Part shown: piece by piece, positions 39,101-57,100 of the stretch
Layout: every line of letters begins with the position of its first letter
Numbering within the stretch: the stretch's first letter is position 1
From: Laetmonice hystrix
Lineage: Eukaryota
NCBI GenBank assembly: GCA_965235115.1
Contig: OZ249438.1
Location: 27,838,001-27,902,000, forward strand
Direction: 5' to 3'
DNA: 64,000 nt
Notes under the pieces: model-generated
Told to the model about the DNA's origin: nothing
What the model saw: only the letters and a program-made list of their open reading frames with translations
Databases searched by the model: none
Translations under genes and position numbers: made by a program

Positions 39101-42100
39101 ATGTACATTTTAATGGTACCATATTAAAAGTAGCACGAGTCGAGGTTAGGCATATTTCCTTCCAGTATCGCCAACTGAAATGCAATGAGACACAATATGA
39201 AAGGTTCACGTCTTAAACTCAGACGTGGGTGACCCCTGGTGGTTCACATAGGTACCAATCATATCCTACAGGGGCGCCACCTGATGGCAACAATAAACGT
39301 TCCTCAAGTTCCGACAGTAAACTGAAGCCAACTTTTGTCTGACCCGCGTCTGGGTCTGAGACTAACCGGGTCCGTGTCCTATAGCAAGCAGAATGGAAGG
39401 TATCAAGCATTAGTAGCTGAAAGAAACATTGAGTTTTAGTTAGACGATTTGTTTACTCTGTTGTCCGTGTACTGACCTTCATGGCGCCTGATTCTGGCAT
39501 GTCGGGATCTGGGTAGGCCTTGATAAACTGTGCCACGTACGTCATCACCGACTTCTCGTCTGGTTTCTCTACGTCAACGTCTGCCAGTGCGGAGGGGGAG
39601 AAAATGAGAGTGTCAGACATTTTTACAATGGCTGTAAATCCCCCCCCCCCCCACCCCCTTCAATTTGATCAACCTCGACCAGTATGTGACACTAACATGG
39701 TGAATCAGTGATGTATAACCCATTCAGAACAAATTAATCCATTCCCAATCAACAACTCTATTATGATTGAACCATAATTCTTCACCTAGAAACAGACTCC
39801 ATGCAATTAAATATTATGTTGGCTTATTGATTGCCGGCGGCTGTAGATTGTATGATTTGGTCAGGGTATGGAGGTAGCTCACCTTCAGGATCGAGAAGTC
39901 TCGGTATCCCGAGCTGTGTCTCGGCGGTAGTGAAGGCATTCTCAAGGTTAACTCGGTTAGAATTATGTGGCAGTCTCTCCAAGTCCATCAACTCGGGCCG
40001 GATGTTGTTAATGATGGCACTAAACGCATGACCATCTCGCCAGCTTTTGCCGAAATCTGTCACTTCCACACCGAAACGTCTGACAAAAGGAGAGAGACAA
40101 GGAAATTAGCACCACAAATTAACAAAATAACCTATAACACTTCTTTTATTCAAAGACATCATACGCTGCATAAGCGTTCCATACCAAATTAAACAATGGG
40201 GCACATCAATCAATTTGCCTATTTTTGAGCTCAATCTAATTATTACAATCAAAACAAATGCCTGTTTACTATTGGCCGGTTGCAATATCTTTGTCTAACT
40301 TGACCGTGATATTTTCACGGCCTCAATTTTGTGTTACCTTTCATTAAGGTTCAAACTTTTCTTTACTAAGTGAGCAGTAACCAAAACCACGATTGAGTCC
40401 TAGACATAAGTTGAAAGGACGAGTTCCGAGCAGCAGTCTCACGGGAGTGGAATGTATTCGGTTCTCGCCAGTGCCAATTCCACAGCTACTCCTATCAATA
40501 TTTGATTACTGCAGCCCCGAGACATGTTGTTAAATTAAGACCAACTGTAAACAAAGGGCCGACCATTATACCCTGAGCTATGGCCAAAATAAAACACTCT
40601 AATTACTTGTCAGCCATCGTACCCTGAATGGGCGGCACAAGATTGGGACAATTTCTAAAGCTGACGTAAGAAAAGGTGAAGAAGGAGATCGAGGCAGAAT
40701 TACGCAGGGGTTCATGTGAGGAAGGAAACGAAAAACATACTTTCGAGCAAGCTATGATCAAAACCTCGAGACAACACTAGTATTGGCGAAAATCACATAT
40801 AACATATTCTATTTAAATTTAAGAAGTGGTATTAATTCTACTATCTGTTACGTTTATGAACGTAACATTATTGCCCCTCCACTCAAATATTTGATGCGCA
40901 TATCCATTGAAAGCTAGTCGTTTCTCCCCAGCAATATCGACACTAACTGCCGTGGAATGATCCAGAAGGTCTCTATATATGAACCTTGTCCTCAGTACTG
41001 GGTCAGACGAGTCAGGCAACAGGTTTCAACTTGTAACAAGAGCTCCCCTCCCTAGGCTAGTAAACTTGTCAGGAATCAATCTTAAGCGACTTTTCACACA
41101 CACTACTAACTACCTCCGGAGTTACTGAGAGAAACCTCTCCAATACCGCCGGCAAATATTTGCAATCCGTGCCGTGAATGAAGGAGCGCCCACACAAAAT
41201 ACGTACTAGTCTAGTACATAAGCTTTACTTTACACACTGTTCCTCGATTATACCCAAGTTACTGAGGCAAACACCTGTTTCAGGTGAATCTGTTAAAACA
41301 CAAATTTCTCCAGTTCGCTTATCCAATCTTTAACCACTGAATACCAAGATACTAAATACCAAGAGGTCTACCGAGGGGAGAGACCTTTAATTTTGGCTTG
41401 GCTACTCGGTACATAGTATACAATTCTTGCACCCTCCCAACTGAAATAAACTCAGGCTTGGCTACTCGGTACATAGTATACAATTCTTGCACCCTCCAAA
41501 CTGAAATAAACTCAAAATTAATTGTTTGGAAAGGTTTGGCGGAGGAGAGGAAGGTATGACGGGCTTACTGATAGATCATGTTTAGTAGGTCCTGCTTGGT
41601 TGGCTCTGTAGCCTTTGACACCTGGATGTCTGGGTGGTCCACTGGCTGCAATCCCGCCGCCAAGGGGCAGTCCGCCATTAGGCCGTCCACCAGGGGCGCT
41701 GGGGAGATAGGTTGGAAGGCCCCGGACCCATGTGGGTGGTAGGAGGCCGGGGTGGCGGTTCCCATTGGTCGTCTGACCATCATGACGTCATCACGGCTGG
41801 AAGGTAGCCGCCGCTGTCTGCGCGGGCTGCGGGCGCCCCCTACTGGTGTTCCTTGGCGGTCCTCCTTGTGATGTTTTGAGCCGGTTGTGACGTCCATGTC
41901 CACGTCACTGTCTGCGTCCACCTCCATACTGCTGTCATGGCGGCGGTATGATTCAGGAGATTGGACGTCACGGGGAGAGGGGGTCTTCCCTCGGCGGCTA
42001 CGGGAACTTGACGAAAAGCTCGTGTCGGCGTTGGGGTCAAGTTGTTTCCTCAGCTCCCTAACCTCATGGATCATGTACTTCAACATCTTTTTCTTGTCGG

Positions 42101-45100
42101 ATTTCTTGCCTTCCCGTGCGCTCCCAGGGCGGGAACCCGTACCGCTCCCATCATCCGGGTCGTGGGATCGTTTGGAGGCCCGGGAGGGGGAGGGGGAGGG
42201 GGTTCCCTCCCGGCCATGTGCAGGGCAGGAGACCACCACGGACGGTGGCGAGTCCCCCTGGCGGTCATCACGTGTACCACGCTGTCTCGTGTCCGGATGA
42301 CGTGGAGACCGGTAGCAGACGGGGAGGTCGCCAGGCGAGCGGCCACGTCTATCCCGATGTCTGATCTCCTCCTTCCTGCTCCAGTCGGTGGGGCACGGAG
42401 ACCGGCGGACGTCCACGCTACTCCTACTCCGAGGTACACTCACTGGTCCGCCATCGTCCCTGAATACATGCTCCGAGAACAGGCAGGCTGAGCTAGGTCT
42501 CTTCACACGTCTCTCCTTCCTCTCTCCCTTCCTCTCCCTCTCCTTCCCCTCTGGGTTCCTCTTTCTGGGCCGGGTCTCTCCTAACGCACTCTTTGGTCGC
42601 TTGGTTTTCACAGATTTCTCTGAGGATACGGGAGATGGTGGAAGGCGGGCCTCCTCAGCGTCTGAGGTAAGGGTTGACATGCTGTGAGCCTTAGCAGTCA
42701 TCAGAAGCGTCCAAGTCTGTGAGCCCAGAGATCGCGAAGATCTGCCCATCCCGTCTGGACTCAGGTCTGAGATCCCAAACTCAGGCTGAGACGACATGTT
42801 GGGGGCTATATGATGTCAACTATCACAGCTGTAGCAGTTTTATCACACAATTTTCTTATCACACGATTGAATTTTCTCAAACAAAATGTCATCACATGGA
42901 ACCACGCAAAAAATCTTGTAACATAATCTCAATTATATCCATCTGCAATAGGGTTGGATCACGCTTTCAACAGGCGAGGTGCAATAAAACCGTTCAAGAA
43001 AAGTATCTGATGAAAACAAGTATCTATCACAGTCTGATGAGATTTCCGTGGGTTGTGTTCATCAAGGTCACTGGAGCTGCAGCCATGCCCATGCCCATGC
43101 TCAGAGACCTCTACCGGTGAAACCTTACATCGCCGGTCAACTCATGCCGACCACCACAGTCAACCTCCACCGCTCACTGTCCTTGTCCATCAGACAGCTC
43201 TGTCTCATCCTCTATCTCAGCCGCTGACAGCTCTGTCTCATCCTCTACCTCAGCCGCTGACAGCTCTGTCTTATCCTCTACTTCAGCCGCTGACAGCTCT
43301 GTCTCATCCTCTACCTCAGCCGCTGACAGCTGTGTCTCATCCTCTACCTCAGCCGCTGACAGCTCTGTCTCATCCTCTACCTCAGCCGCTGACAGCTCTG
43401 TCTTATCCTCTACCTCAGCCGCTGACAGCTCTGTCTCATCCTCTACCTCAGCCGTTGACAGCTCTGTCTCATCCTCTACCTCAGCCGCTGACAGCTCTGT
43501 CTCATCCTCTACCTCAGCCGCTGACAGCTCTGTCTTATCCTCTACCTCAGCCGCTGACAGCTCTGTCTCATCCTCTACCTCAGCCGCAGCAGACAGTCAC
43601 ACGTCTCACACATAACTCGCAAAGTTTCCTTAACAGCTACAAAAACAGTTCTAGTCGGGTGAAATGTGCGCTGTGGACCAGAGACCGTGAGGGACCAACG
43701 TTCATTGAGGTGGCACTGGATCCAAGGCGGCATCAGGTCATGGGTCACGTGCTATATGTAGGTCAGGGTGCACGTGGTCATTTGACGTAGATCTGAGTCA
43801 GATTAACGTGAAGATTCCACTGTCGGCCGGGTGTCCACGGTAGATAATACCGTGGCACGAGTGTGATTTATAGTACTGACCCAAGTACAAGAGAATGTAA
43901 CCTCCCCCTTGTAGACAATGATTCCTGGACTCAGACTTATCTCTGTCCGCTCAGACCGAACCAAGCGTCCATGTCAACATTTCTTCTGGAGAAATAAACT
44001 GGACAGATCTAGCCGAGTTTCTTCAGCCAGGCCTGGGATCCTTTATAAACACTAACACGGTCACGAAGACCAGTCATTCCGAACTGAATGCCAAGTACCG
44101 AGCCTCCATACAGAGCTGGCCATCCACAGAGTCCATGTTATTTGCTTACAGAAGTCTGAGACCAGTTGTTGAGGCGTACATGGCAGGTATAACACCAGAT
44201 CCTACGACCCGATACTGTGACCAAGAGACGTGAGTGCCTGGCTGACCGGGAGGTCTACTGCTGCTGACATTGTTAGTGTTGGTCTAATCCAATGGCGCCA
44301 AGACTTGACTTGATCAAGTCTGAACAGGTGTTAACTTCCTACCGCCCATTACCATGTCGGTACCACCTCCCACCCTCTCCTCTCGGTCCTCGCTCAATCA
44401 ATGACCTCTGGGTCAGAATATAAAAACCTTTCCGTCCTCACGTTAAACCAGATGATCTAAGGATCGAGCCGGCAGGTTGGACTTGTAGATCAACTCGGAT
44501 CCACCGTCAGATCTGCCCGACTCTGGCCTCATTCCGGTGCCAACTTGTTACACAATCCTGAACCACTCAACAGACCAACTCAAGTCTTTCTCACTCCAAA
44601 GGCAGTGTGTTGACACAACACACCGAGTTTCACAACTTTCAAATCCTGTCGGTAGAATTTCTGCGGATTGATCAAGGACACCTGACGATCGCGTCTGTCT
44701 TGGAATCACTTTGAAGAGATTATTCATGATAACAGATTGAGAATTTCCAGATCAAACTCTAGTACTCCACTGATCTCTCTTCAGTACTACCTGAAGCATT
44801 CCTGTGTCCTTTGCTGTCCATTCTGAATCGGTTTGTTTGGAAAACAAAAGTTTAAAGTGAGGAAAACTAAAACGCTCAGATCTTACCTGGCGTTCGGTCC
44901 CCGACGTCAGCGTCTCTCATTATGAACGCCAGACGGTGACCACTCTCTTTTCATTTTAACACGAAAATCAATAACTAAAAACCGATAACTCAGTGTGTCC
45001 CTGCTCTGACTGGAAGCTCCTCATGTAATGAATGACCTGCCCCTCCCCCCCCCCCCCCACATGGTCTCCCCCCTACCCTCATTCGAGAAAAATCCAGATT

Positions 45101-48100
45101 TACTACGACGTACGTTACAATATATCATGATATAGAGACGGGAGATGACAAAGATGGTTTGGGAAGGATTGGTGTCCGGTACGAGGACAGAAGCTCTCAG
45201 TGAGATTATAACGGTTTGTAGAAGGTCTGATTGCCAGAGAGGCTTTCATATCCCTGGCCCAATGATATCAGGGATCCCGTGCCCTCTGACCTCTCGGGTC
45301 AATCCTGGCCTGCTCCCGTCCCCGCCTTGAGTATAAAATGATGGCACTGGTCGTAAACTACGGTACTGAACCAACATGGTACGCCTTTATCTTGGTCAAC
45401 TTTTTCTTCTGGTTTCTAATAAAAAAAAACATTTCACGCTCTCTAGCATTACTACCGCGTAACACGTGTTCATAAGGCATTACGACTCTAAGATAAGGAC
45501 AATAAACACGGTTCTTAAAGATATGTAGTTCCTTTTTATTTGGTAGGTAGAAATTCACGCGTGTTTTGCGAGTCCCCAGTCGTTCAATGTGGTTTTTATA
45601 GTGTTGTTCCGTGTGTGCAGTGTCTCCCCACGCTAAGGTAGGGGGCGCTGTAGTGCAATAAGAAGCGCCGGTAGCGCCACCTAGCGTCGGACGCTGCGTC
45701 ATGCCAGAAGACGCAGGTGGCGTGTTGGGGCATGATCCGGGCCCCAATCACACAATGCGAGACGAATTCAATTAACTCTAACAATAGATGGAGTTACAAC
45801 TGCCAATAAAAATCCCTACAAATACCGTCTGTACACTTGGTATAGGCAACAACTGCGTCGAAGTTAATCCATCCCTCAGTGAGCACTTATGGATTCAACA
45901 ACAAATCCAATTTGAGAGTTATTTTAATTCTGTCACTCACAGCTATAAATGGACGTCAAAACCACATATCAAAAAGAACGTCCTCATTATAAGATTTCCA
46001 CGGTCACGCCAAGCTGGCGAACTGGTTCTCCTGATCCCACTTCCAAGGGATCAGATCCAGCTGGCCAGTATCACATATACTTGCCATCGTGTTTGTGTCA
46101 ATCACGATTTTACTGTCGGAATGACTAATGTAGCATTAAGTAATTCTGATGTACAGACTTCCCTGGGTTGTTCCACTAAACACACATTCCATGTTCTTCT
46201 TGATATTCTTCGATAATGTACTGTTGATTTTTTAAGAATCATTTTTTCGAATATGCAGCTGAAATTGGCAAGATATTTGTTCTTGTTTTAAACCTTGTGA
46301 ATACTCGGCTACCTTGGAGACGTTCTAACTACTGATGGACGTAGGCTCAGTGGTCACCCCAGGCAGTTGTTTACCACAGTACAATAGAGTAGAGGCATGT
46401 TGTTCCAATACACCAATCAATAGTGACCTGGGGCGAGGGTTGGCGATTACGTCATAGCCACCATCGATAACCATGAACGCCCACGTAAATCTGGGGTTGG
46501 TTGGAGTGAAGGAGGAATGTCCTTACTGCAGGGCTTTCAATCTAATCCGGCAGCCGGTGGCTCCCCGTCTACAGGTACAACCTTCGCCAGCTACGTGAAC
46601 TCAGCTCACCAAACAAATTGACAGGTTTTTGCCATGATGCAAAAATCACAAGGTCATATGCTCAACATGGCATAAAATCTTGTTAGTAATTACTCAACAA
46701 AGTGATGGCGCCTGACTCTTTAGCCAAATCCCCGTCTAATCAAAAACAATTTAAAAGCCCTGTTAACTGAAACGTACCATTATATTAGAGTAACTTTTCA
46801 GAAGTGTGACTGACAAATATAGAAACTTAAATATAGTCTACAATGTCAATAATATTCTTCTATTTTGAATAAACGGCATGTCTAACTCTGCTGGTCACTT
46901 CATGTCGTTTATGTGGTCGTGGCTGACTGACCAACCACAGCAGGTCCGGCAATCTCTGCGCCAGTTGTCGCCTATTTACCTGGCAACCACCCCGGCCCGT
47001 GCTGGACGGGCGCTGGCAGCGAGCGGCTGGAGGCGGCGGGCTCTGCCGTCACTGAGGGCAGACGTCGGGAGTGGTGGGGGTGGGGGCGGGGTGGGGCCGC
47101 TACCTGCTCCCAAACAACCAATCAGCGCAACCAGCGGCTCAGTGATTAACAAACCCACATTCAGACTTGGCATTTACAGTTAGCGGCCTATGTCCGAGCT
47201 ATCACACCTCCGCCGGGGTTGCTACAGTATATCGTTGTCAACCGCGGTGTCAAGCGACTCCTCAGCCTTATAAACCGAGTGCTGTGTCTACCTGACAGCA
47301 GGAGATCACACGACCAGACCACTTCCCACGACTTCCAGCACGACTCCCACAATCAACCCGGGAACACGAGCAAACACAGGGTCACTCCTTCTGTCGTGGC
47401 TTTTGGTAAAAAACATTGAAAGTCGGAGATTTTGGATTCCATAGTGTTGTTCTGTACACACCGACTAACACCCGGTCAACATGAGTACCCAGGTGAGGAA
47501 AGTCGCCAAGACGAAGCGCCAGGCCCTGACAAAGCAAGCCGAGTTCCTGGTGAAGAAGTACCGCTTCCAGAAAGACGAAAACGAGAAACTTCTCAACCTG
47601 TTCAGTCGGGAAACCAAGGGTAAGAACAAGATGGACCGTAACACGTTCCGTAACGTGCTCCACAACTGTTTCGACATGACAGACGACATCATCATGGACC
47701 GTGTGTTCAAGGCGTTCGACAAGGACAACGACTCCCAGATCAGCGCCGAGGAGTGGATCCGCGGAATGTGTATCTTTCTGAGGGGGACGTTTGACGAGCG
47801 GATCACCTTCTGTTTCGACGTGTATGACATGAACAGTGACGGCTACATATCCCGGGAAGAGATGTTTCACCTGCTCAAACTGTGTATTATCAAACAGACC
47901 GGGGATGAGGACCCAGACGAGGGGATCAAGGAACTAGTTGAGATCGCGTTGAAGAAAGCTGACCAGGACCACGATAACCGAGTATCGTTCGCCGACTACC
48001 AGACCACGTGTCGTCAGGAATCTCTCCTCCTAGAGTTTCTCGGGCAGTGTCTGCCAACTGAAGTGAAGGTGGATGCCTTCGAGTGTCTGCTGAGAGGGGA

Positions 48101-51100
48101 CCCTGATGCCCTCTACCAGAGCGCCAGGCAGGACTGTGAGCAACAGAGCCCCGAGACGGACTGATCAGGGCATTATTTGTGAACATCTTCCTACAAATAG
48201 GTTATCATTTGTGTACTGTATACGGAAGCTGGAAATACAGAAACGTTACATGTATTTTATTGAGATTGATTCTTACACATACTATATGCTTATAATAAAT
48301 GTCTGGACCGTGACATGTGGTTGTACCATTGAACTTGTGGATATTTGTGATCATTCCTGGAATGTATGCCAACAATCGCCAAATTTACGAAATCAAGCCA
48401 GCGTTGTACCAGCTACCAAGGGCGTGTCTATCTATAGGAACATAAGGTAATATAACGGTGAACCTTGCTAAAACACTGCTGATCTATCCCTTAGCCCCCA
48501 CTCCACAGTGGACAAACATGGAATGTTATTCCAGTCATTATCAATCCATCTCTGATGATTATCTATGATAAATATTTGATATCAACTTTGTTCGGTTTAT
48601 CTAAGCTCAGCAAATCTGAGCTCCTTTCCCGTTGCTACGTACACGGACATGTAGAGGTGCACAATAACAAGGTTTCTACAACCAACAATTCCAAGGCAAT
48701 CATCGGCTTATCTTGCCATTAACATTTTTTCCTGGTCAATCCGTTTAGTATGCTCCTTAACCCGGTGTGTGTAGGTCATACCATCAGACAAGACTTACAC
48801 CAGATATTTGCAGAAAAAAAGTGGTAAAATGTCAGTTTTAAGTTATGTACGGATATATCATTTATAAATAAATTGAGATGGCTAATATATGAACCTATCA
48901 TTTCGATGTTGTTTTATATTTGATATTTACCCAGTTAGACCCCACAGGTAATCTACTGTAATATCGCTATCGCTTACAAAGATTTACCGGTACTTGTTTC
49001 TTGGATAACGCCCCCCCCCCCCCCCCAATATGTATCACATATTGTAACTTGAGCTTCGTCTAATTTGAAGTTTTACTCGAAAGTCACGGGTTAAAGGGGT
49101 AATCGCTTTCTGTCTTATCATCACTGGCGAAATTTCCTTGAATTCGAAAAAGAAACAAGACTGATAAATTTGTCTTGAATTTCTCATGGACCCCCATCTG
49201 ACCGAATGCACTCTGTGGCACTGTGGACACAATGTGGCAGGTTTGCCGACTCTAATTTGGCTGCCGTTTGTTCGTCGGTTACCGAGACTAATCCACCATA
49301 ACAAAAAGTCAATCCTGACTGAGTTTGAAGGTGACAAACTTGGCGGCCAGTACTTGACATACGTTTGGAGGCTGTGGCTGAGACGCTGAGTCCATACCGA
49401 CTGTCGAGAACCATTATATACGACCGGCAAACCACCACTTGGTGGCGCTGTTACTCTAAGTACTAGTTTTACTGTGTTCTCCGGCCAACTTAAAAAAACA
49501 ACTTCTTAAAGGGGAACGGTAGGACCTACTGACCGTTCGAGGGTAATAAACCACTGTCGAAGGGCCAGCCCGCTGAGAGAGGGCTCATTACAAACTTATT
49601 ATGCTCCTCCTACTGAATGATGCGTTAGATCACATGACCACGTACTGGTAAATTCAAACTGGCAAACACACAGACCGGGAATCTGAACATAGATTTTCTG
49701 TCAAATATTTCAGAAAAATTAAAGGTTGATTTTTATGTCAAGTGCATATTCTTGGTCCCTGTATCTTCTTCATTTAATAGAACAGTTTTGAAGTGTATCT
49801 ATGTTCTGTTTCTGGTTATTTCGAAAACATCTGAAAAAAAGGGGTGGAGACCTGTCCCATTTCAAATCTGTTGGGCTACTGGGGCAGGTGTATGTTGGTC
49901 CGAAATCCTGTCTCTGTCCATCCTAAGATACATCACAGGTGTCATAAAATCTCATCAAGTTACGAAACCAGCATGGTAATCAGGAACCCTACTGCCTTAC
50001 AACAAATCTAATTACTCGACTACTTTCTCCACTGGGTACGGTCTGGTCTGGTACGATCAGTTAGACCGCCTCAGTATGAACCAATGGTCAGTTGGCGGCC
50101 GTGCCGCATACAGAGTACCGGTGGGGTAGTGCCTGTGATGGTCGGTTGGCGGCCGTGCCGCATACAGAGTACCGGTGGGGTAGTGCCTGTGATGGTCGGT
50201 TGGCGGTCGTGCCGGATACAGAGTACCGGTGGGGTAGTGCCTGTGATGGTCAGTTGGCGGCCGTGCCGCATACAGAGTACCGGTGGGGTAGTGCCTGTGA
50301 TGGTCGGTTGGCGGCCGTGCCGGATACAGAGTACCGGTGGGGTAGTGCCTGTGATGGTCGGTTGGCGGCCGTACCGCATACAGATTACCGGTGGGGTAGT
50401 GCCTGTGATGGTCGGTTGGCGGCCGTGCCGGATACAGAGTACCGGTGGGGTAGTGCCTGTGATGGTCGGTTGGCGGCCGTGCCGGATACAGAGTACCGGT
50501 GGGGTAGTGCCTGTGATGGTCGGTTGGCGTGGTTAGAGACACGGCCGGCTTCGTGCCAAATCGGTCCTCCAGGAGCTTCTCCTACTCTCGTCCCCTCAAT
50601 TCTTAATGACGGAGAGCCCCCCCCCCCCCCGCCCCCTCCTCCTGCCCCGGCCTACATGAACCTTTGCCAGCCTCACGTGTTCTTACGGCAGCAGGAGGAC
50701 TCTGAGGTCTGCAGCAACACACCCACCGCCTGACAAATGTCCTAATTCATCCAATAAAAGTCTACAGCTCCCACAAATTATAAACTGGGGGTTTGGATGC
50801 GCCCTGGAAGTTCTAGGTTTTTACATCAGTGGCAGATACCATAGAAAATGTTGTACTGTCCAGAACTACATCTGACAACAGTGACACACGCTCTGTCCCA
50901 GACATGTCGCCCACACTGCTGCAGGAGGTACTACATTAGTAATAAATGCTTTACCCGTGCTGTGTGACGGAAGTCCTCTATATCTCACTCCGTACGTACT
51001 CTGCCTGTTAATAACAGGACCAATGTATCTAAGTTCTATAATATAAAGTCCCAATCATTCTGATCTCACACGAGTCGTATCTCAGAGTCCTGCATGATTC

Positions 51101-54100
51101 AAATCATGAGCTCAACCTTCCAATATATGGAGAGACGTGAGTGTTGGGACTCAATTCATCCTTTATTATGCCCCTCTAAGCTTTTTATGGTTCACTTCTT
51201 GCTATGTTTTTTTTTCACAGCATACTCGGTAAATCATATGATTAGACTAGAGAAACTCATCCTTCAGTAGTATCTTGAAGGACGACTATAGACAGGATGT
51301 CCTTACTTACCAAGTTTGGATTTAAACTCTATTCTAAGGAACACACCTGGACTAACTCCATTAAGAAATATTTTAATACTTATTCTTGCCAGGCTATGAA
51401 TCCGCGACACTAGATATCCCCCCCCCCCCCCGGGATAGAGATTAGAGGTTGTACTCACTTGGTGACTGCCTTCTGGACCCACATGAGCATGGCCTTCTTA
51501 GCGCCTCCCTTGAACTTCTCCAGGGCGCCTGACCTGGAGCGTTTGGCCGCTGAGCTCTCCTCCGTGGGGGACTGTGCCATCTGTGCCATCATACGTGTGT
51601 TCTCCTCAATCTGAAGATAAACCCAACCCCACAATGATGTAATCTTACCCTGTACATAATTCTGAGGTAATAAAGCAGGTACATGCGAGGACATTCGCTG
51701 TTGGCAGTTTAAACCATTACATTGGAGATTTGAAATCTCAACCTTTGGACCTTAAACATGTGCCTTTCTCTCACATACCGCTACTTCACAATTCCAGCCC
51801 AATCAGTGGTCTGTAAAAGGTGGTTAAGAATTAGATTGAGAAATATGTACAACTAAATTCCAGATTTCTAAGAAACCCAAACCAGTCACACCGGACAAAC
51901 TGATGGCAACAAAGCTGACTGAACTCCTGGTTCAGCTGAACAGCTGACAGAAAAAGACCAGCCTCATCCAGGCTCTGCTTTTTCTTCATTAGCCACACTG
52001 CAGATCTGTGTACATGTTGCATTGGATTGTCAATGCCAGCAAAAAGGCTGAGGTACTGCGCACTATTTGTTGTTTGAAACCACCACAAGAAGCTCTGTCA
52101 GTAGATATGGAAGTCGAAGATTACAAAGTTTCACTGCAGCATGCTCCGCTGTAAGCGTGTAAGCAATGGGGCGGCCCCCTTTGACGGGTCTTTAAACATC
52201 GACGTAATAGCTGCAGGCAAGACATTTTCTATCTTTATAATCAACTAATGAGGGAACTCGGCTTGATTAAAGATTTTCAATAAATTAGCCCTTTTAAGTG
52301 TCCATCAAAGTATATACATCTCTAAGAGTCTCCCTCTTTTGGCTTTCATTTATTTTACTTCTTTTTAGTTATGAAAATATGTCATCCCTGCCATGAGCAG
52401 GAACAGAGATGAAATATTACGAGAAAAATAATCAGGTTGAGTGGCGGTTCAAACAGTATATCTATGGTATCTTAGTATCAGAGTACCATAGATACTCTAC
52501 GGGATCTTATTACAAGGATATCACACGCCTATGGTGACATTCATGGCCATAGTGCTGAGTCTTACTGGCTTATGCCTGGCTAAGGCCACCACAACGGGTT
52601 GGGAGGCCTCCCCCAGCAACGTCGATAAGTACGAAGTCTCTATCTGTCAGAGGTAAAGTTTCAATCAAACAAAAATACATTAATCGTGGGGGTTAACACA
52701 GGGTTACGATTGCTATTGTTACTGCTGCAAAAACGGAGACGAAAAATACATCAATCAAAGCGGATCACAGACACAGTGCCATTATATTAAAGTTCTAGTG
52801 CTCGTGAATGTTTGTGCCGACAGCTGACAGCTGTGCTTGAACGTACAGCTCATCCAAAAAACAAACTTTTTGAGAACTTTTAATATTTTCCGATTTAACT
52901 GAAAACATTTGGTAGAAATCACAGATTCTCATAAGAAAATCTTTTCTATCCTTGATACATGAGTGGTTTCACTTTCTGTGATTTGCACGAGACTCTTTGA
53001 GAAACAGGAACGTAAACATGAGTTTGATGAAGCAGTTTGAATGACAAACCTCCTTGCTTTATTTAGATCTACCGGTGTATATAATTCATCAGCTTTCCCG
53101 TCTCCCCTGGAATTTCTCCAATATTGTTTGTCTATAACATGTGCCTCAGTACCCGTGAAGGATCAAACTTACTCGAGTGAGAGCCCCCCCTCATGAATAT
53201 TTAACTGATACGTTTTCTCAACGACAGGCACGATACGTTAGCGTCATAATACCTGTGCCCCAATCCTTACACTTCATCATTCCCCAAGGATTTACACCAC
53301 TGAATGTTACAACTACCAACTTCAAACATTTGGACCAGAACCCACAGCTTTAGATAAGATCTTCAAAATATTACAATGCCACAACACAACTCCAAGGAAA
53401 TCCCACCTTTTTTTAAGAGGATTTATAAAATTATCAGCCAAATAAACGATTCGCCCAATTCGATAATGAACACATCAAACTCCAAATAAAGGTTAGTTTT
53501 CAACCACAACCATGAACTCTCTCTCAGCGAGATACCTCGACACTATCCTGTTCCCCTGACTGACACCGACTTAGGGAGTCGTTCAGGGAAAACCCCTTGG
53601 GGAGCCGCAGCACTGCTGCCACCTGGTGAACAAAGTGGGCACTAATGTCAATTTGTTTGACTGTCTATCAAAATCTTTATAACAGTGAAAGACAGCTGTC
53701 ACCTAATACCATGGCAGCTAATACCATGAGGTCACGCTGTTTATGAAGCCTACTAAACCTATTTATCCTACCATAATATTAAGTCTTTTCCTAAGGGGGT
53801 TGAACACCCCCCCCCCCCCCCAACATCCTGATAAAGAGGTGACTGACCTGGAAGTAGAGGATGATTGTCCAGATGAGTCCGAGGACGATTGAAGGTTTGC
53901 CATCCACCACATCTGACGGGTTGATGTTCACCAGTTTAATCTGTAACCGTATCATATCATAGCTACAGCACACTGGCAGGACAAAATAGACTTGGGGAAA
54001 TAAACAAATTAGGGAAAACCAAATATTCGTCTATGAAAGTCCACAATTCGGGAAGAAAAGGCCCCGACTAAACGTAGGAACCTCTCTCACAGGACTTTTA

Positions 54101-57100
54101 ATCTTTGCACACTAGTTGTCCCTTTATTGCTTTCTTATTTTGAAACATAAACACTGGAAACATATGAGGCTTTGTCTTCTTAACTATATTAAATTTATCC
54201 CATATTTTCTCTTTTCTTCTTCAGTATCAAAACGTGTATTAGTGTAAAGTCTCCATGCACAATAACTTTTCTAACCATGTATCCGAGATTACAGAAACGA
54301 TTGGATCCTGTCGACATGACAAAGTTTCTGTCATACCTCTGACCGAACATGTCACAGATTACGATTATACACGTGCATGTTAGAACAGTTTGGTCACATT
54401 AACATGTTACCGGTACTCCCATAACATCGGGCCTTAGGGACGTATTCTCCAAACAAACACACGCCATGCCCAACATCAATCCTATATCATAGCATTCTCT
54501 GGTTGTAAACCATGCCATTTCAACAGTCGTTTGATCGTTGTAGCTTGCTACCACGGCAGAAAACACCGTATAACTGGTAACCCCACGAAAATGGTGTTTA
54601 GAAAATCAACCTGGGACCCACATCTGTGGAGATCTACTGTTTGTTTTCATTCAAACTGAGGAACATCACACACAGGAATGGGTGGCGAGAGTTTGAGTGG
54701 ACCCACCAAATCTGGAGCTATCACCTTGACCAGGATCTGAAACACCACCAGCATCGTGTAGCTACACTGTGGGCAACTCGGCAACCACAGACTACTGGGG
54801 GATCATAGGATCATCGAGAGACCAGGGGCCGCTCTTACATCATGTCACATCATCAGAGAATAACTCAGCAACAAAAATATCGGAGAAACAAGTCATAAAC
54901 TTAGGGAAAAACCATTACAATAGTATTGTTCTATAATATAAAGTATGCTTATAAATTTGTCAATATACACCCCGTACTTAGGAAAAAGGCCAATTTTTTA
55001 ATCGCTCCACAGCCCCTTAGACAGTAGATTAATCAAGCCACGTCGCTTACCTTTCTAGTTTCTAGAAACTGTATGGCTTTTGTGATGTTACTGATGTGGT
55101 GAACCCGCTTCATTGGTTTTCCTGGCTGAACTTTCTCCACTGTCTGAAAGTAAAGTACGTGTATGCTAGTTCAGGAAGAGGCGACTTCTAGATTGCACAC
55201 ACATAAATTATTATAGGGGGTCTACGTAAGAAATAAGTCTTTCTGAGGACTCTCCGACTTTAAAGGTGCTATTCGTGAACAAAAATTTTTTTATTTTTTA
55301 TTTTGTTGACGTTTATGTGATCCCATCTATCATGGAAATAGATTCACAACAAAGGAAATCAAAATTTTTCATAGATAACGGCACAAATGGGGCTCTCTCA
55401 GAAGGCCTGTAGAGACCCTGACACGCCCCACCATAGGAAATGGCTCTATCTCGGTGCGCACCGAGATAGGTTTCAAATGCTGCACACAAACTAATAGAAG
55501 GTTTATCAGGCCAATGGTATCGGTAGGAATTTTTTCTAGTACTATGTGCACAATGTATGATAGGAGAAATGCCATTCTGTGCGAGACGAATAGCACCTTT
55601 AACGTCCTCCTATAGACACACCTCGTCTATGTCAGTTTTACGGACTACCGGTATATAATGTGTTGTGACATGGTTTTGTCCGACTATAGTCGACTGTCCG
55701 CTGTGAAAGCTGCTGGGCGCTGTAGTGCGTACAGTTGACCCGAGGGGGCAGCACTTACCAAGGTCTCGCCGGAGAGGACTTCAAGGAGGCCGAGGAGCGT
55801 GATGCCGTCCTTGATATCCTCAAACAGGTCTTCCACCTTCCGCGGAGGCGTCCGCTGGTAACCATGACAACAACATAATGAATATCACTAACACCATTTC
55901 CACGATCCAAACAATATCAGGACAAAAACTTGAAGGAAATTCATAAAATCTATAACCACTGGTAACGCTGCCACCGGCATGTTCAGATCTAAATGTATGT
56001 TAGATGTCAATGAGATATTATGCTAACCGTACAAACATATCGCATGCGGCCATGTGTACAGAACGAACAAGTTTTCGCTGGACATACCCAATACCAGTTA
56101 AATAATTAATCGACGCTGATTTATTACTAGTTCACGCTTCCCTTCAATTAACTCTGGTCAATATTTACTTAAATATAAAATGTTAACCTTATATTCAATT
56201 GGTTTGAAAATCTACTTCAACAGTGAGGCAATTCCGCGAGTTCCGTCCGTTTTCCGCGATCGCGGAAATATTTACATTAACAGTGACGCAATCACAGGAA
56301 CATTTGGCCGCTAAATTTAATGGTTATAACCGGTAACGAGCACGAGAAAAATACCGAAAACATGATGCACTTAACCGATTGCTGTTCCGGTTACGGTCTG
56401 TAGAATGTCACTAACATGTTGCTATAAATCCACGGTCCCCCTCCATAAAGTATTTTCATCTGTTTGTTTTCGGCACCAACATTAGGTGCTGATCCAGGGA
56501 AAGGGGTCTAGGGGGTTAACACGCCCCGGTAAGCCCTTCACAAACTTTAACAAACAGAAACTAAATCACTGTTGCACCCCCTACTTGCCTCATGCATGGG
56601 AACACTCGTGTGACTTCCCCTAAGATTACTGCTGAATACCAAATCTATCCTATTTAACTAATAAATTTTGACGGTGAACCCATCTTTTCAAGAGTTTATA
56701 CTCCTGGTTTAATTATGTGTGGGGTACTGCAAACACCGGGTAAGAGAAGCGCAAAACCTCCGTTAAACAATGCCACGTGGATGGCTTCCCAAGACTCTCA
56801 CCTACACCCCTGAGCTATGTTCACACAATACGACACCCAGATTGCAATGTCTGCTAATTAGGATTCTGTGATTCGTATACCGGAGAGGGGTAATATAATA
56901 TATCTATTTATACAGCCACGCCATTGACAGTCACATCTTGTAAACTCCCAACATTAGCGTTGAGAATAGGGTGGCAGGTCTACATGAACAATACCTCTCT
57001 CGTCCTCAAATGGCTTATGTGGAAATAAACTTGCGCAATTCTCGTTTACATCTACTTTGATAATGTGGGATAAGATGCTTCCATCTGTACGGGTGTGACT

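What the first reader, a model, noticed from the sequence alone, without database searches (positions are those of the whole stretch)
47481..48164. Intronless calaxin gene nested antisense in the CH2-splitting intron (probable retrogene)
Seen: a complete single-exon ORF with intact EF loops, a compact upstream promoter signature and a downstream AATAAA. Established: calaxin/EFCAB1 is a Ca2+ sensor of outer-arm dynein in sperm flagella and motile cilia, and the vertebrate gene is multi-exon. Inference: a retrocopy that gained a promoter, possibly sperm- or cilia-specific, with an acidic C-terminal extension (LYQSARQDCEQQSPETD). No poly-A remnant or TSD is visible, so the insertion would be old. 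Its transcription converges on and could interfere with the CH1 isoform while leaving the promoter near 43-45 kb unaffected, which would be a possible isoform switch.
Basis: partly seen in the sequence, partly recalled or inferred. Interest (0 to 1): 0.75.

Follow-up and report, generated by a model that had tools for sequence, protein, structure and literature searches.

The report
Old intronless calaxin copy inside host intron
This is a real, intact, intron-free extra copy of the cilia and sperm calcium sensor calaxin, lying backwards inside an intron of a large actin-binding gene. The animal looks like an annelid worm, not a fish, and the copy is old, conserved and most likely made by retroposition, so it is a tidy but fairly ordinary case.

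Summary
Window 47481-48164 (+) is a complete 227-codon single-exon calaxin/EFCAB1 gene with three intact Ca2+ loops. It matches solved calaxins at E about 1e-62, against 1e-19 for the next EF-hand family. It lies antisense in the intron that splits the CH2 domain of a minus-strand CH1-CH2 gene.

The same genome has two more calaxin genes.
- C12 keeps the intron positions shared with Nematostella and sits head-to-head with NMT, as in Nematostella and Haliotis. It is the ancestral locus.
- C6 has three coding exons.

The window gene lacks all six ancestral introns and sits elsewhere, so it is a derived, most likely retroposed, copy. The trees favour the C6 lineage as its closest kin, but AU tests do not exclude C12.

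It is old. Two other species carry an intact single-ORF orthologue (62-68% amino-acid identity). One lies between the same host exons. The other shares a conserved intronic marker about 4.5 kb upstream. Synonymous sites are saturated and dN/dS is at most about 0.13.

My trees place this genome's calaxins with annelids and outside vertebrates, so the genome is not a fish. Expression and the proposed isoform-switch interference could not be tested, because only DNA runs exist. Verdict: new member of a known kind, modest interest.

The parts
47481..48164 (+). Single-exon coding sequence (227 aa plus stop) of a calaxin/EFCAB1 paralogue. EF loops at residues 80-91, 116-127 and 161-172; variable acidic/Gln-rich tail after about residue 205.
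   Evidence: Intact single-ORF orthologues P0001 (L013:10001-10681) and P0002 (L014:4532-5221).
47084..47274 (+). Candidate core promoter motifs: GC box 47084-47089, CCAAT 47118-47122, TATAAA 47269-47274. This is a sequence observation only.
   Evidence: Not conserved in L013 or L014, and no RNA data exist, so use is unproven.
48294..48299 (+). AATAAA, 130 nt after the stop codon: candidate polyadenylation signal.
   Evidence: L013 has ATTAAA at +276; L014 has none within 500 nt.
51458..51751 (-). Open segment holding the host-gene exon immediately upstream (in host orientation) of the intron that contains the calaxin gene. The conserved part is about 51458-51611. It is inferred to carry the CH1-CH2 linker and the start of CH2.
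   Evidence: Conserved in L013:12847-12984 at 67% aa identity. No Pfam or PDB match of its own, so its role is inferred from its neighbours.
39827..40105 (-). Host-gene exon that starts at about position 21 of the CH2 domain, on the far side of the intron holding the calaxin gene.
   Evidence: Pfam CH positions 21-86, E 1.4e-12. Aligns to the CH2 of beta-spectrin, plectin and MACF1. 79% aa identity to L013:3388-3591.
41568..42815 (-). Alternative first exon of the host gene (subject of another finding) in the same intron. It lies head-to-head with the calaxin gene, about 4.7 kb away.
   Evidence: Open segment with a conserved block matching L013:5013-5120; earlier finding s1-344600. Not studied further here.

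Best explanation
The window gene is a functional, ancient retrogene-type paralogue of calaxin, the EF-hand Ca2+ sensor and stabiliser of outer-arm dynein in motile cilia and sperm flagella.

Proposed history (inferred):
- The ancestral annelid calaxin gene survives on C12, next to NMT, and still has the six old metazoan intron positions.
- A spliced mRNA of that gene, or more likely of its early duplicate now represented by the 3-exon C6 gene, was reverse-transcribed.
- The copy inserted antisense into the CH2-splitting intron of a CH1-CH2 spectrin-superfamily gene.
- It acquired expression signals and has been kept under purifying selection since before the split of at least three species.

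Likely function (inferred): the protein keeps full-length calaxin similarity and all three Ca2+ loops. It therefore most likely still binds Ca2+ and outer-arm dynein or its docking complex, probably in a subset of ciliated cells or in sperm alongside the other two paralogues.

Shown here: gene identity, intron absence, paralogues and their intron maps, ancestral synteny, orthologous nesting, and selection.

Inferred only: the retroposition mechanism, the identity of the parent, expression, and the dynein-related role.
For: (1) Identity: PDB calaxins at E 9e-63 against 1e-19 for other NCS proteins. EF loops are intact, including the EF2 Glu.

(2) Paralogues: C12 has introns in codon F29, at R74/V75 (phase 1), in codon F110, at K138|Q139, at A160|D161 and after the CLPxxK motif (window numbering). 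These match Nematostella in position and, where determined, in phase. Capitella shares them except the K|Q intron, which it lacks, and has one extra intron near its N-terminus. C6 keeps only the R74/V75 intron and has a private GC-AG intron at K150|E151.

(3) Ancestral locus: NMT lies head-to-head about 3.5 kb from the C12 gene, as in Nematostella and Haliotis. The window copy is therefore the relocated one.

(4) Trees: (C6,(window,(P0001,P0002))) gets 98/97 in a 49-row careful tree and 90/73 in a 63-row tree. The three intronless genes together get 100/91. C12 falls inside an annelid clade with Capitella and Ridgeia (95-96/93-94). Vertebrates are excluded at 98-100.

(5) Age and synteny: in L013 the orthologue lies between the same host exons, in the same order and orientation. 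L014 shares a 29-nt, 97%-identical marker about 4.5 kb upstream.

(6) Selection: dN is 0.18-0.29. dS is 1.9 or saturated, so dN/dS is at most about 0.13. All three ORFs are intact. The one heterozygous coding SNP, 47981 A>G, is synonymous.

(7) The retrocopy is as similar to outgroup calaxins (mean 59%) as C12 is (59.7%), and more so than C6 (53.7%).
Against: No poly-A remnant or target-site duplication survives, so retroposition is inferred only from the wholesale absence of introns together with relocation. C6 has itself lost five of the six old introns, so stepwise intron loss does happen in this subfamily. AU tests do not reject alternative placements: window clade with C12 excluding C6 has p 0.13, and C6 with C12 has p 0.15. 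The parent is therefore unresolved. There is no transcript evidence: the only runs holding the stretch are genomic DNA at even 30-57x depth across the intron. The promoter motifs are not conserved among orthologues, and an X-box search gave only a one-mismatch hit at chance frequency. The dynein-related function rests on homology alone.
Confidence: 0.7

Rival explanations
1. A DNA-level duplicate (segmental or other) of a calaxin gene that landed in the host intron and then lost all its introns one by one, with no RNA intermediate.
For: The sister paralogue C6 has lost five of six ancestral introns and gained a new one, and Capitella lost one. Intron loss is therefore active in this family. 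No poly-A or TSD is seen.
Against: All six introns are absent in all three known orthologues, with no intermediate. The copy is a bare coding unit nested inside an unrelated gene, with no flanking paralogous sequence, which is the usual signature of retroposition. Intron loss is itself generally thought to use cDNA recombination.
Confidence: 0.2
2. An ancient intronless calaxin-2 lineage shared across Spiralia, or an ancestrally intronless gene, and not an annelid-lineage retrocopy.
For: Patella caerulea has a single-exon calaxin. It shares the 'LG' (instead of 'FG'), 'RF' and 'KELVEI' states with the window clade and grouped beside it in the first trees. An AU test did not reject Patella plus the intronless three as a clade (p 0.22).
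Against: With gastropods added, Patella sits with Lottia inside a 100/99 gastropod clade. Its Haliotis and Babylonia members are multi-exon, and the Haliotis gene is NMT-linked, so they are canonical orthologues. Patella's intronless state is therefore an independent event. No other named spiralian protein carries the signature among the 120 best hits. Ancestral introns are shared from Cnidaria to Annelida.
Confidence: 0.06
3. A processed pseudogene or chance ORF with no function.
For: No transcript evidence is available.
Against: The 227-codon frame is intact in three species whose synonymous sites are saturated. dN/dS is at most about 0.13, and all Ca2+ ligands are kept.
Confidence: 0.02

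Closest known systems
Calaxin (EFCAB1/CLXN; Ciona calaxin PDB 5X9A; bovine and human calaxin in the outer-arm-dynein docking complex, PDB 7RRO and 8J07)
   Same: Full-length alignment at about 55-60% identity. Three canonical Ca2+-binding EF loops, including the EF2 glutamate needed for Ca2+ binding. Similar length. No Gly2 for myristoylation.
   Different: It is a third, intronless paralogue in a genome that also keeps the canonical NMT-linked gene. It carries clade-specific substitutions (LLLE-F/L-LG instead of LLLEAFG; RF instead of HF; GTFDE; MNSDG) and a variable acidic tail of about 15-20 residues. Axonemal binding is untested.
Functional retrogenes nested antisense in host-gene introns (a well-known class in animals)
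   Same: An intronless copy of a multi-exon gene, relocated from the ancestral locus, lying wholly inside an intron on the opposite strand, with an intact ORF under purifying selection.
   Different: It is so old that poly-A, TSD and UTR similarity are gone. Its closest paralogue (C6) is itself intron-poor, so the direct parent is ambiguous.
Patella caerulea single-exon calaxin (P0095)
   Same: An intact intronless calaxin away from the NMT locus, with several of the same residue changes.
   Different: It belongs to the gastropod canonical calaxin clade, is not nested in the same host gene (nearest annotated gene is a sortilin-type receptor 9 kb away), and is an independent event.

Membership tests
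Calaxin / EFCAB1 (NCS-type EF-hand sensor of outer-arm dynein) | Full-length sequence similarity to experimentally defined calaxins that clearly exceeds similarity to other NCS, KChIP or calcineurin-B proteins | tested here: met
   E 9e-63 to 2e-61 to 7rro_I3, 5x9a_A and 8j07_m0, against 1.3e-19 for the best non-calaxin. Falls inside the calaxin tree.
Calaxin / EFCAB1 (NCS-type EF-hand sensor of outer-arm dynein) | Three functional Ca2+-binding EF loops (EF1-3), including the last Glu of EF2 (zebrafish E130, Ciona E118) | tested here: met
   Loops DKDNDSQISAEE (80-91), DMNSDGYISREE (116-127, E127) and DQDHDNRVSFAD (161-172). Role of the Glu from PMC11178939.
Calaxin / EFCAB1 (NCS-type EF-hand sensor of outer-arm dynein) | Binds outer-arm dynein or its docking complex in the axoneme | not testable with these tools
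   Needs biochemistry or localisation. No RNA or protein data exist for this organism.
Retrogene (functional processed retrocopy) | Lacks all introns that the parental or ancestral gene has | tested here: met
   Six ancestral positions are present in own C12 and in Nematostella; Capitella shares all but one of them. All are absent from the window ORF and from P0001 and P0002.
Retrogene (functional processed retrocopy) | An intron-containing parent or paralogue exists elsewhere in the same genome, and the copy is not at the ancestral locus | tested here: met
   C12 (at least 6 coding exons, head-to-head with NMT as in Nematostella and Haliotis) and C6 (3 exons). The window copy is on C3 inside an unrelated gene.
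Retrogene (functional processed retrocopy) | Insertion scars: 3' poly-A tract and target-site duplications | tested here: inconclusive
   None visible within 500 nt. Neutral sites are saturated between orthologues, so such scars could not have survived. Their absence neither supports nor excludes retroposition.
Retrogene (functional processed retrocopy) | Intact ORF under purifying selection (as opposed to a processed pseudogene) | tested here: met
   dN 0.18-0.29, dS at least 1.9 or saturated, dN/dS at most about 0.13. Intact in 3 species.
Retrogene (functional processed retrocopy) | Transcribed from its own promoter | not testable with these tools
   No RNA run is indexed. X1-X3 are genomic DNA contigs.
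Nested antisense gene in a host intron | Lies wholly within one intron of the host gene on the opposite strand, conserved in relatives | tested here: met
   Host CH exons on the minus strand lie on both sides. L013 has the same order and orientation. L014 shares the upstream intronic marker.

The most novel reading that the evidence does not exclude
This annelid lineage runs three specialised calaxins. The nested retrogene is as well conserved as the canonical C12 gene and better than C6. It could be the main outer-arm-dynein Ca2+ sensor of one ciliated cell type, for example sperm as opposed to larval ciliary bands. Its antisense position could couple its expression to the choice between the CH1-containing and CH1-skipping isoforms of the host actin-binding gene.
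Probability: 0.1. Interest if true: 0.5.

Novelty: new member of a known kind. Interest (0 to 1): 0.3.

Why it matters
Calaxin is usually treated as a single-copy dynein regulator. The papers I could search describe no animal paralogues. A lineage with three intact calaxins, one of them an old retrogene, offers a natural experiment on how the Ca2+ control of ciliary and flagellar waveform can be split among cell types. It is also a clean worked example of dating a retrogene when its insertion scars are gone, using conserved intron positions, ancestral NMT microsynteny and orthologous nesting. Beyond that it is an ordinary kind of event.

Tried and rejected
1. Expression. The look-up of sequencing runs found no RNA run. 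The three runs that hold the stretch come from one sample and cover the gene and its intronic flanks alike, so they are genomic DNA and say nothing about transcription.

2. Cilia-type regulation. An RFX X-box scan gave a single one-mismatch hit at -506. Such hits occur 41 times in the 64-kb window, and none was found in the orthologues' upstream 800 nt. Rejected as evidence.

3. Promoter conservation. blastn of the whole intron against L013 and L014 found only the coding region and one unrelated 30-40-nt block. TATA, CCAAT and GC boxes are not shared.

4. Assigning the parent. AU tests left every alternative standing, with p between 0.13 and 0.33.

5. A pan-spiralian intronless calaxin-2 family. 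This was suggested by Patella and dropped after gastropod sampling and gene-structure and NMT-synteny checks.

6. It does not fit my trees.

7. Not done:
- ESM Atlas features only repeated 'EF-hand/EFCAB1' and gave no taxon.
- A words look-up for calaxin in earlier findings returned nothing.
C6-type orthologues in other species therefore remain unsurveyed.
- The first and last small exons of the C12 gene were not located.
- I did not verify that the host gene is a nesprin, only that it has CH1-CH2 exons.
Full report
**What is there.** The plus strand at 47481-48164 holds a 227-codon ORF, and the open frame extends only four codons above the ATG. Pfam sees EF-hand pairs. Against the PDB, the best matches are bovine, human and Ciona calaxin (7rro_I3, 8j07_m0, 5x9a_A) at E 9e-63 to 2e-61 over residues 13-210. 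The next family, the KChIPs, scores only 1e-19. The three Ca2+ loops are canonical: 80-91, 116-127 and 161-172. E127 corresponds to the last residue of EF-hand 2. Mutating that residue (zebrafish E130A, Ciona E118A) abolishes Ca2+ binding (PMC11178939).

They are short and are not conserved in the orthologous loci. I record them as candidates only.

**Host gene.** Minus-strand segments are conserved in a related locus. Those at 55687-55884 and 53794-54030 match CH-profile positions 19-49 and 75-108, which is CH1. The segment at 39827-40105 matches CH positions 21-86 and aligns to the CH2 domains of beta-spectrin, plectin and MACF1. The conserved exon within 51458-51751 lies between them and has no match of its own. 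It is head-to-head with, and about 4.7 kb from, the alternative first exon at 41568-42815. I did not test whether the host is a nesprin.

**What organism.** My evidence disagrees.
- In three trees, all of this genome's calaxins fall outside a vertebrate clade supported at 98-100%.
- The canonical copy (C12) sits in a clade with Capitella, Ridgeia and unnamed sequences at 95-96/93-94.
- Other agents' notes on this genome say spiralian, probably annelid.

I treat it as an annelid-type genome.

**Paralogues and intron maps.** A six-frame search of the whole genome (627 Mb, 35 contigs) finds only two other calaxin-type loci. The remaining hits are other EF-hand genes at 42% identity or less.

The C12 locus (about 10468262-10473304, plus strand) has at least six coding exons. 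Its first and last small exons were not located.

| Intron | Position (window numbering) | Phase |
|---|---|---|
| 1 | in codon F29 | 1 |
| 2 | R74/V75 | 1 |
| 3 | in codon F110 | 1 |
| 4 | K138\|Q139 | 0 |
| 5 | A160\|D161 | 0 |
| 6 | after CLPTDK | 0 |

Mapping the annotated proteins of Nematostella and Capitella onto their loci shows these same positions. Capitella has lost the K|Q intron and has one extra intron near its N-terminus. The positions are therefore ancestral to Metazoa.

The C6 locus (30513100-30514963, minus strand) encodes a 211-aa protein in three exons. It keeps only the R74/V75 phase-1 intron and has a private GC-AG intron at K150|E151. All three paralogues keep intact EF loops.

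**Which locus is ancestral.** The Nematostella and Haliotis calaxin genes each lie head-to-head with N-myristoyltransferase. In this genome the only NMT matches are at C12:10463833-10464658 on the minus strand, about 3.5 kb from the C12 calaxin exons. C12 is therefore the ancestral locus, and the window gene on C3 is a relocated copy with none of the six old introns. That combination is the classical signature of retroposition. The scars (poly-A, TSD) are absent, which is expected given the age shown below.

**Closest kin.** Careful maximum-likelihood trees give (C6,(window,(P0001,P0002))) at 98/97 with 49 rows and 90/73 with 63 rows. The three intronless genes form a clade at 100/91. They share derived states with C6: LLLE-x-LG instead of LLLEAFG, RF instead of HF, GTFDE, MNSDG. 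C6 retains an ancestral intron, so it cannot descend from the intronless gene.

The favoured order is a DNA duplication of C12 to a proto-C6, followed by retroposition into the host intron. AU tests reject neither the window clade with C12 excluding C6 (p 0.13) nor C6 with C12 (p 0.15). They also do not reject an origin inside the annelid calaxin clade (p 0.30-0.33). The parent is therefore favoured, not proven. The three own copies are about equidistant (55-59% identity), so these are old events.

**Age, synteny, selection.** The protein database holds just two close relatives: P0001 (226 aa) and P0002 (229 aa), at 62-68% identity over aligned codons. Both are encoded as single ORFs on genomic contigs.
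- In L013 the gene lies between the same host exons, in the same order and orientation. Eleven collinear matches have host-exon identities of 38-86%.
- L014 is too short to reach the exons, but its first 29 bases match window 43081-43109 at 97%. The same block lies 4.0-4.5 kb upstream of the gene in all three loci.

Pairwise dN is 0.18-0.29. dS is 1.9 or not computable because of saturation, so dN/dS is at most about 0.13. The only heterozygous coding variant in the sequenced individual, 47981 A>G, is synonymous (CGA to CGG). The gene is as similar to outgroup calaxins (mean 59%) as C12 is (59.7%), and more so than C6 (53.7%). It is a maintained protein-coding gene, not a pseudogene.

**A side lead that was followed and closed.** Patella caerulea's calaxin is also single-exon and shares some of the same residue states. 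That raised the idea of an ancient intronless spiralian lineage. A second protein search showed that it belongs with the gastropod 'calaxin-like' proteins. Haliotis and Babylonia members of that group are multi-exon, and the Haliotis gene is NMT-linked. With gastropods in the tree, Patella joins Lottia inside a 100/99 gastropod clade, apart from the window clade. Calaxin has thus become intronless independently at least twice.

**What could not be shown.** No RNA run is indexed for this organism. The three runs that hold the stretch are one sample's genomic DNA, with contigs spanning gene and intron at even depth. An X-box scan and a search for conserved promoter sequence gave nothing above chance. 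The papers I could search describe calaxin as an opisthokont dynein Ca2+ sensor and OAD stabiliser. They mention no animal paralogues or retrogenes.

**Verdict.** The retrogene reading is largely supported once the taxon and the parent are corrected. The regulatory speculation is untested. This is a new member of known kinds (the calaxin family; an old nested retrogene), of modest interest.

Noticed in passing
window 43081-43109 (also L013:5970-6008, L014:1-29): A 30-40-nt non-coding block is 87-97% identical across three species whose synonymous sites are saturated. On the host (minus) strand it reads three tandem GCATG(G) units, the (U)GCAUG Rbfox-type motif. It lies about 270 nt upstream of the alternative first exon 41568-42815, so it may be a conserved splicing or promoter element of the host gene.
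   Followed up: partly
G000:C6:30513100-30514963 (-), loci L015/L016: A third calaxin paralogue of 211 aa in three coding exons. It keeps only the ancestral R|V phase-1 intron and has a private intron with a GC donor at K150|E151. It is the fastest-evolving copy. It could be a semi-processed retrocopy or the result of cDNA-mediated intron loss.
   Followed up: partly
G000:C12:10463833-10473304 (loci L023/L024); L027; L029: Head-to-head NMT-calaxin microsynteny is conserved between a cnidarian (Nematostella), a gastropod (Haliotis) and this genome. It is a handy marker for the ancestral calaxin locus.
   Followed up: yes
L026/L028 (Patella caerulea, GCA_036850965.1): Patella's calaxin is a single 645-nt exon away from any annotated NMT gene, while the Haliotis and Babylonia orthologues are multi-exon. 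This looks like an independent intronless (probably retroposed) calaxin that may have replaced the parent in limpets.
   Followed up: partly
window about 49028-50616: Many Logan contigs join or break at these two points, with different sequences beyond them, and depth rises several-fold. This indicates a multi-copy repeat or transposable element of about 1.6 kb inside the same host intron, 0.9 kb downstream of the calaxin gene.
   Followed up: no
window 41569-42797 (earlier finding s1-344600): The follow-up note on that finding calls the host a 'fish giant nesprin gene'. The calaxin trees, the NMT synteny and other notes on this genome point to an annelid-type spiralian, so that taxon statement should be rechecked.
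   Followed up: partly
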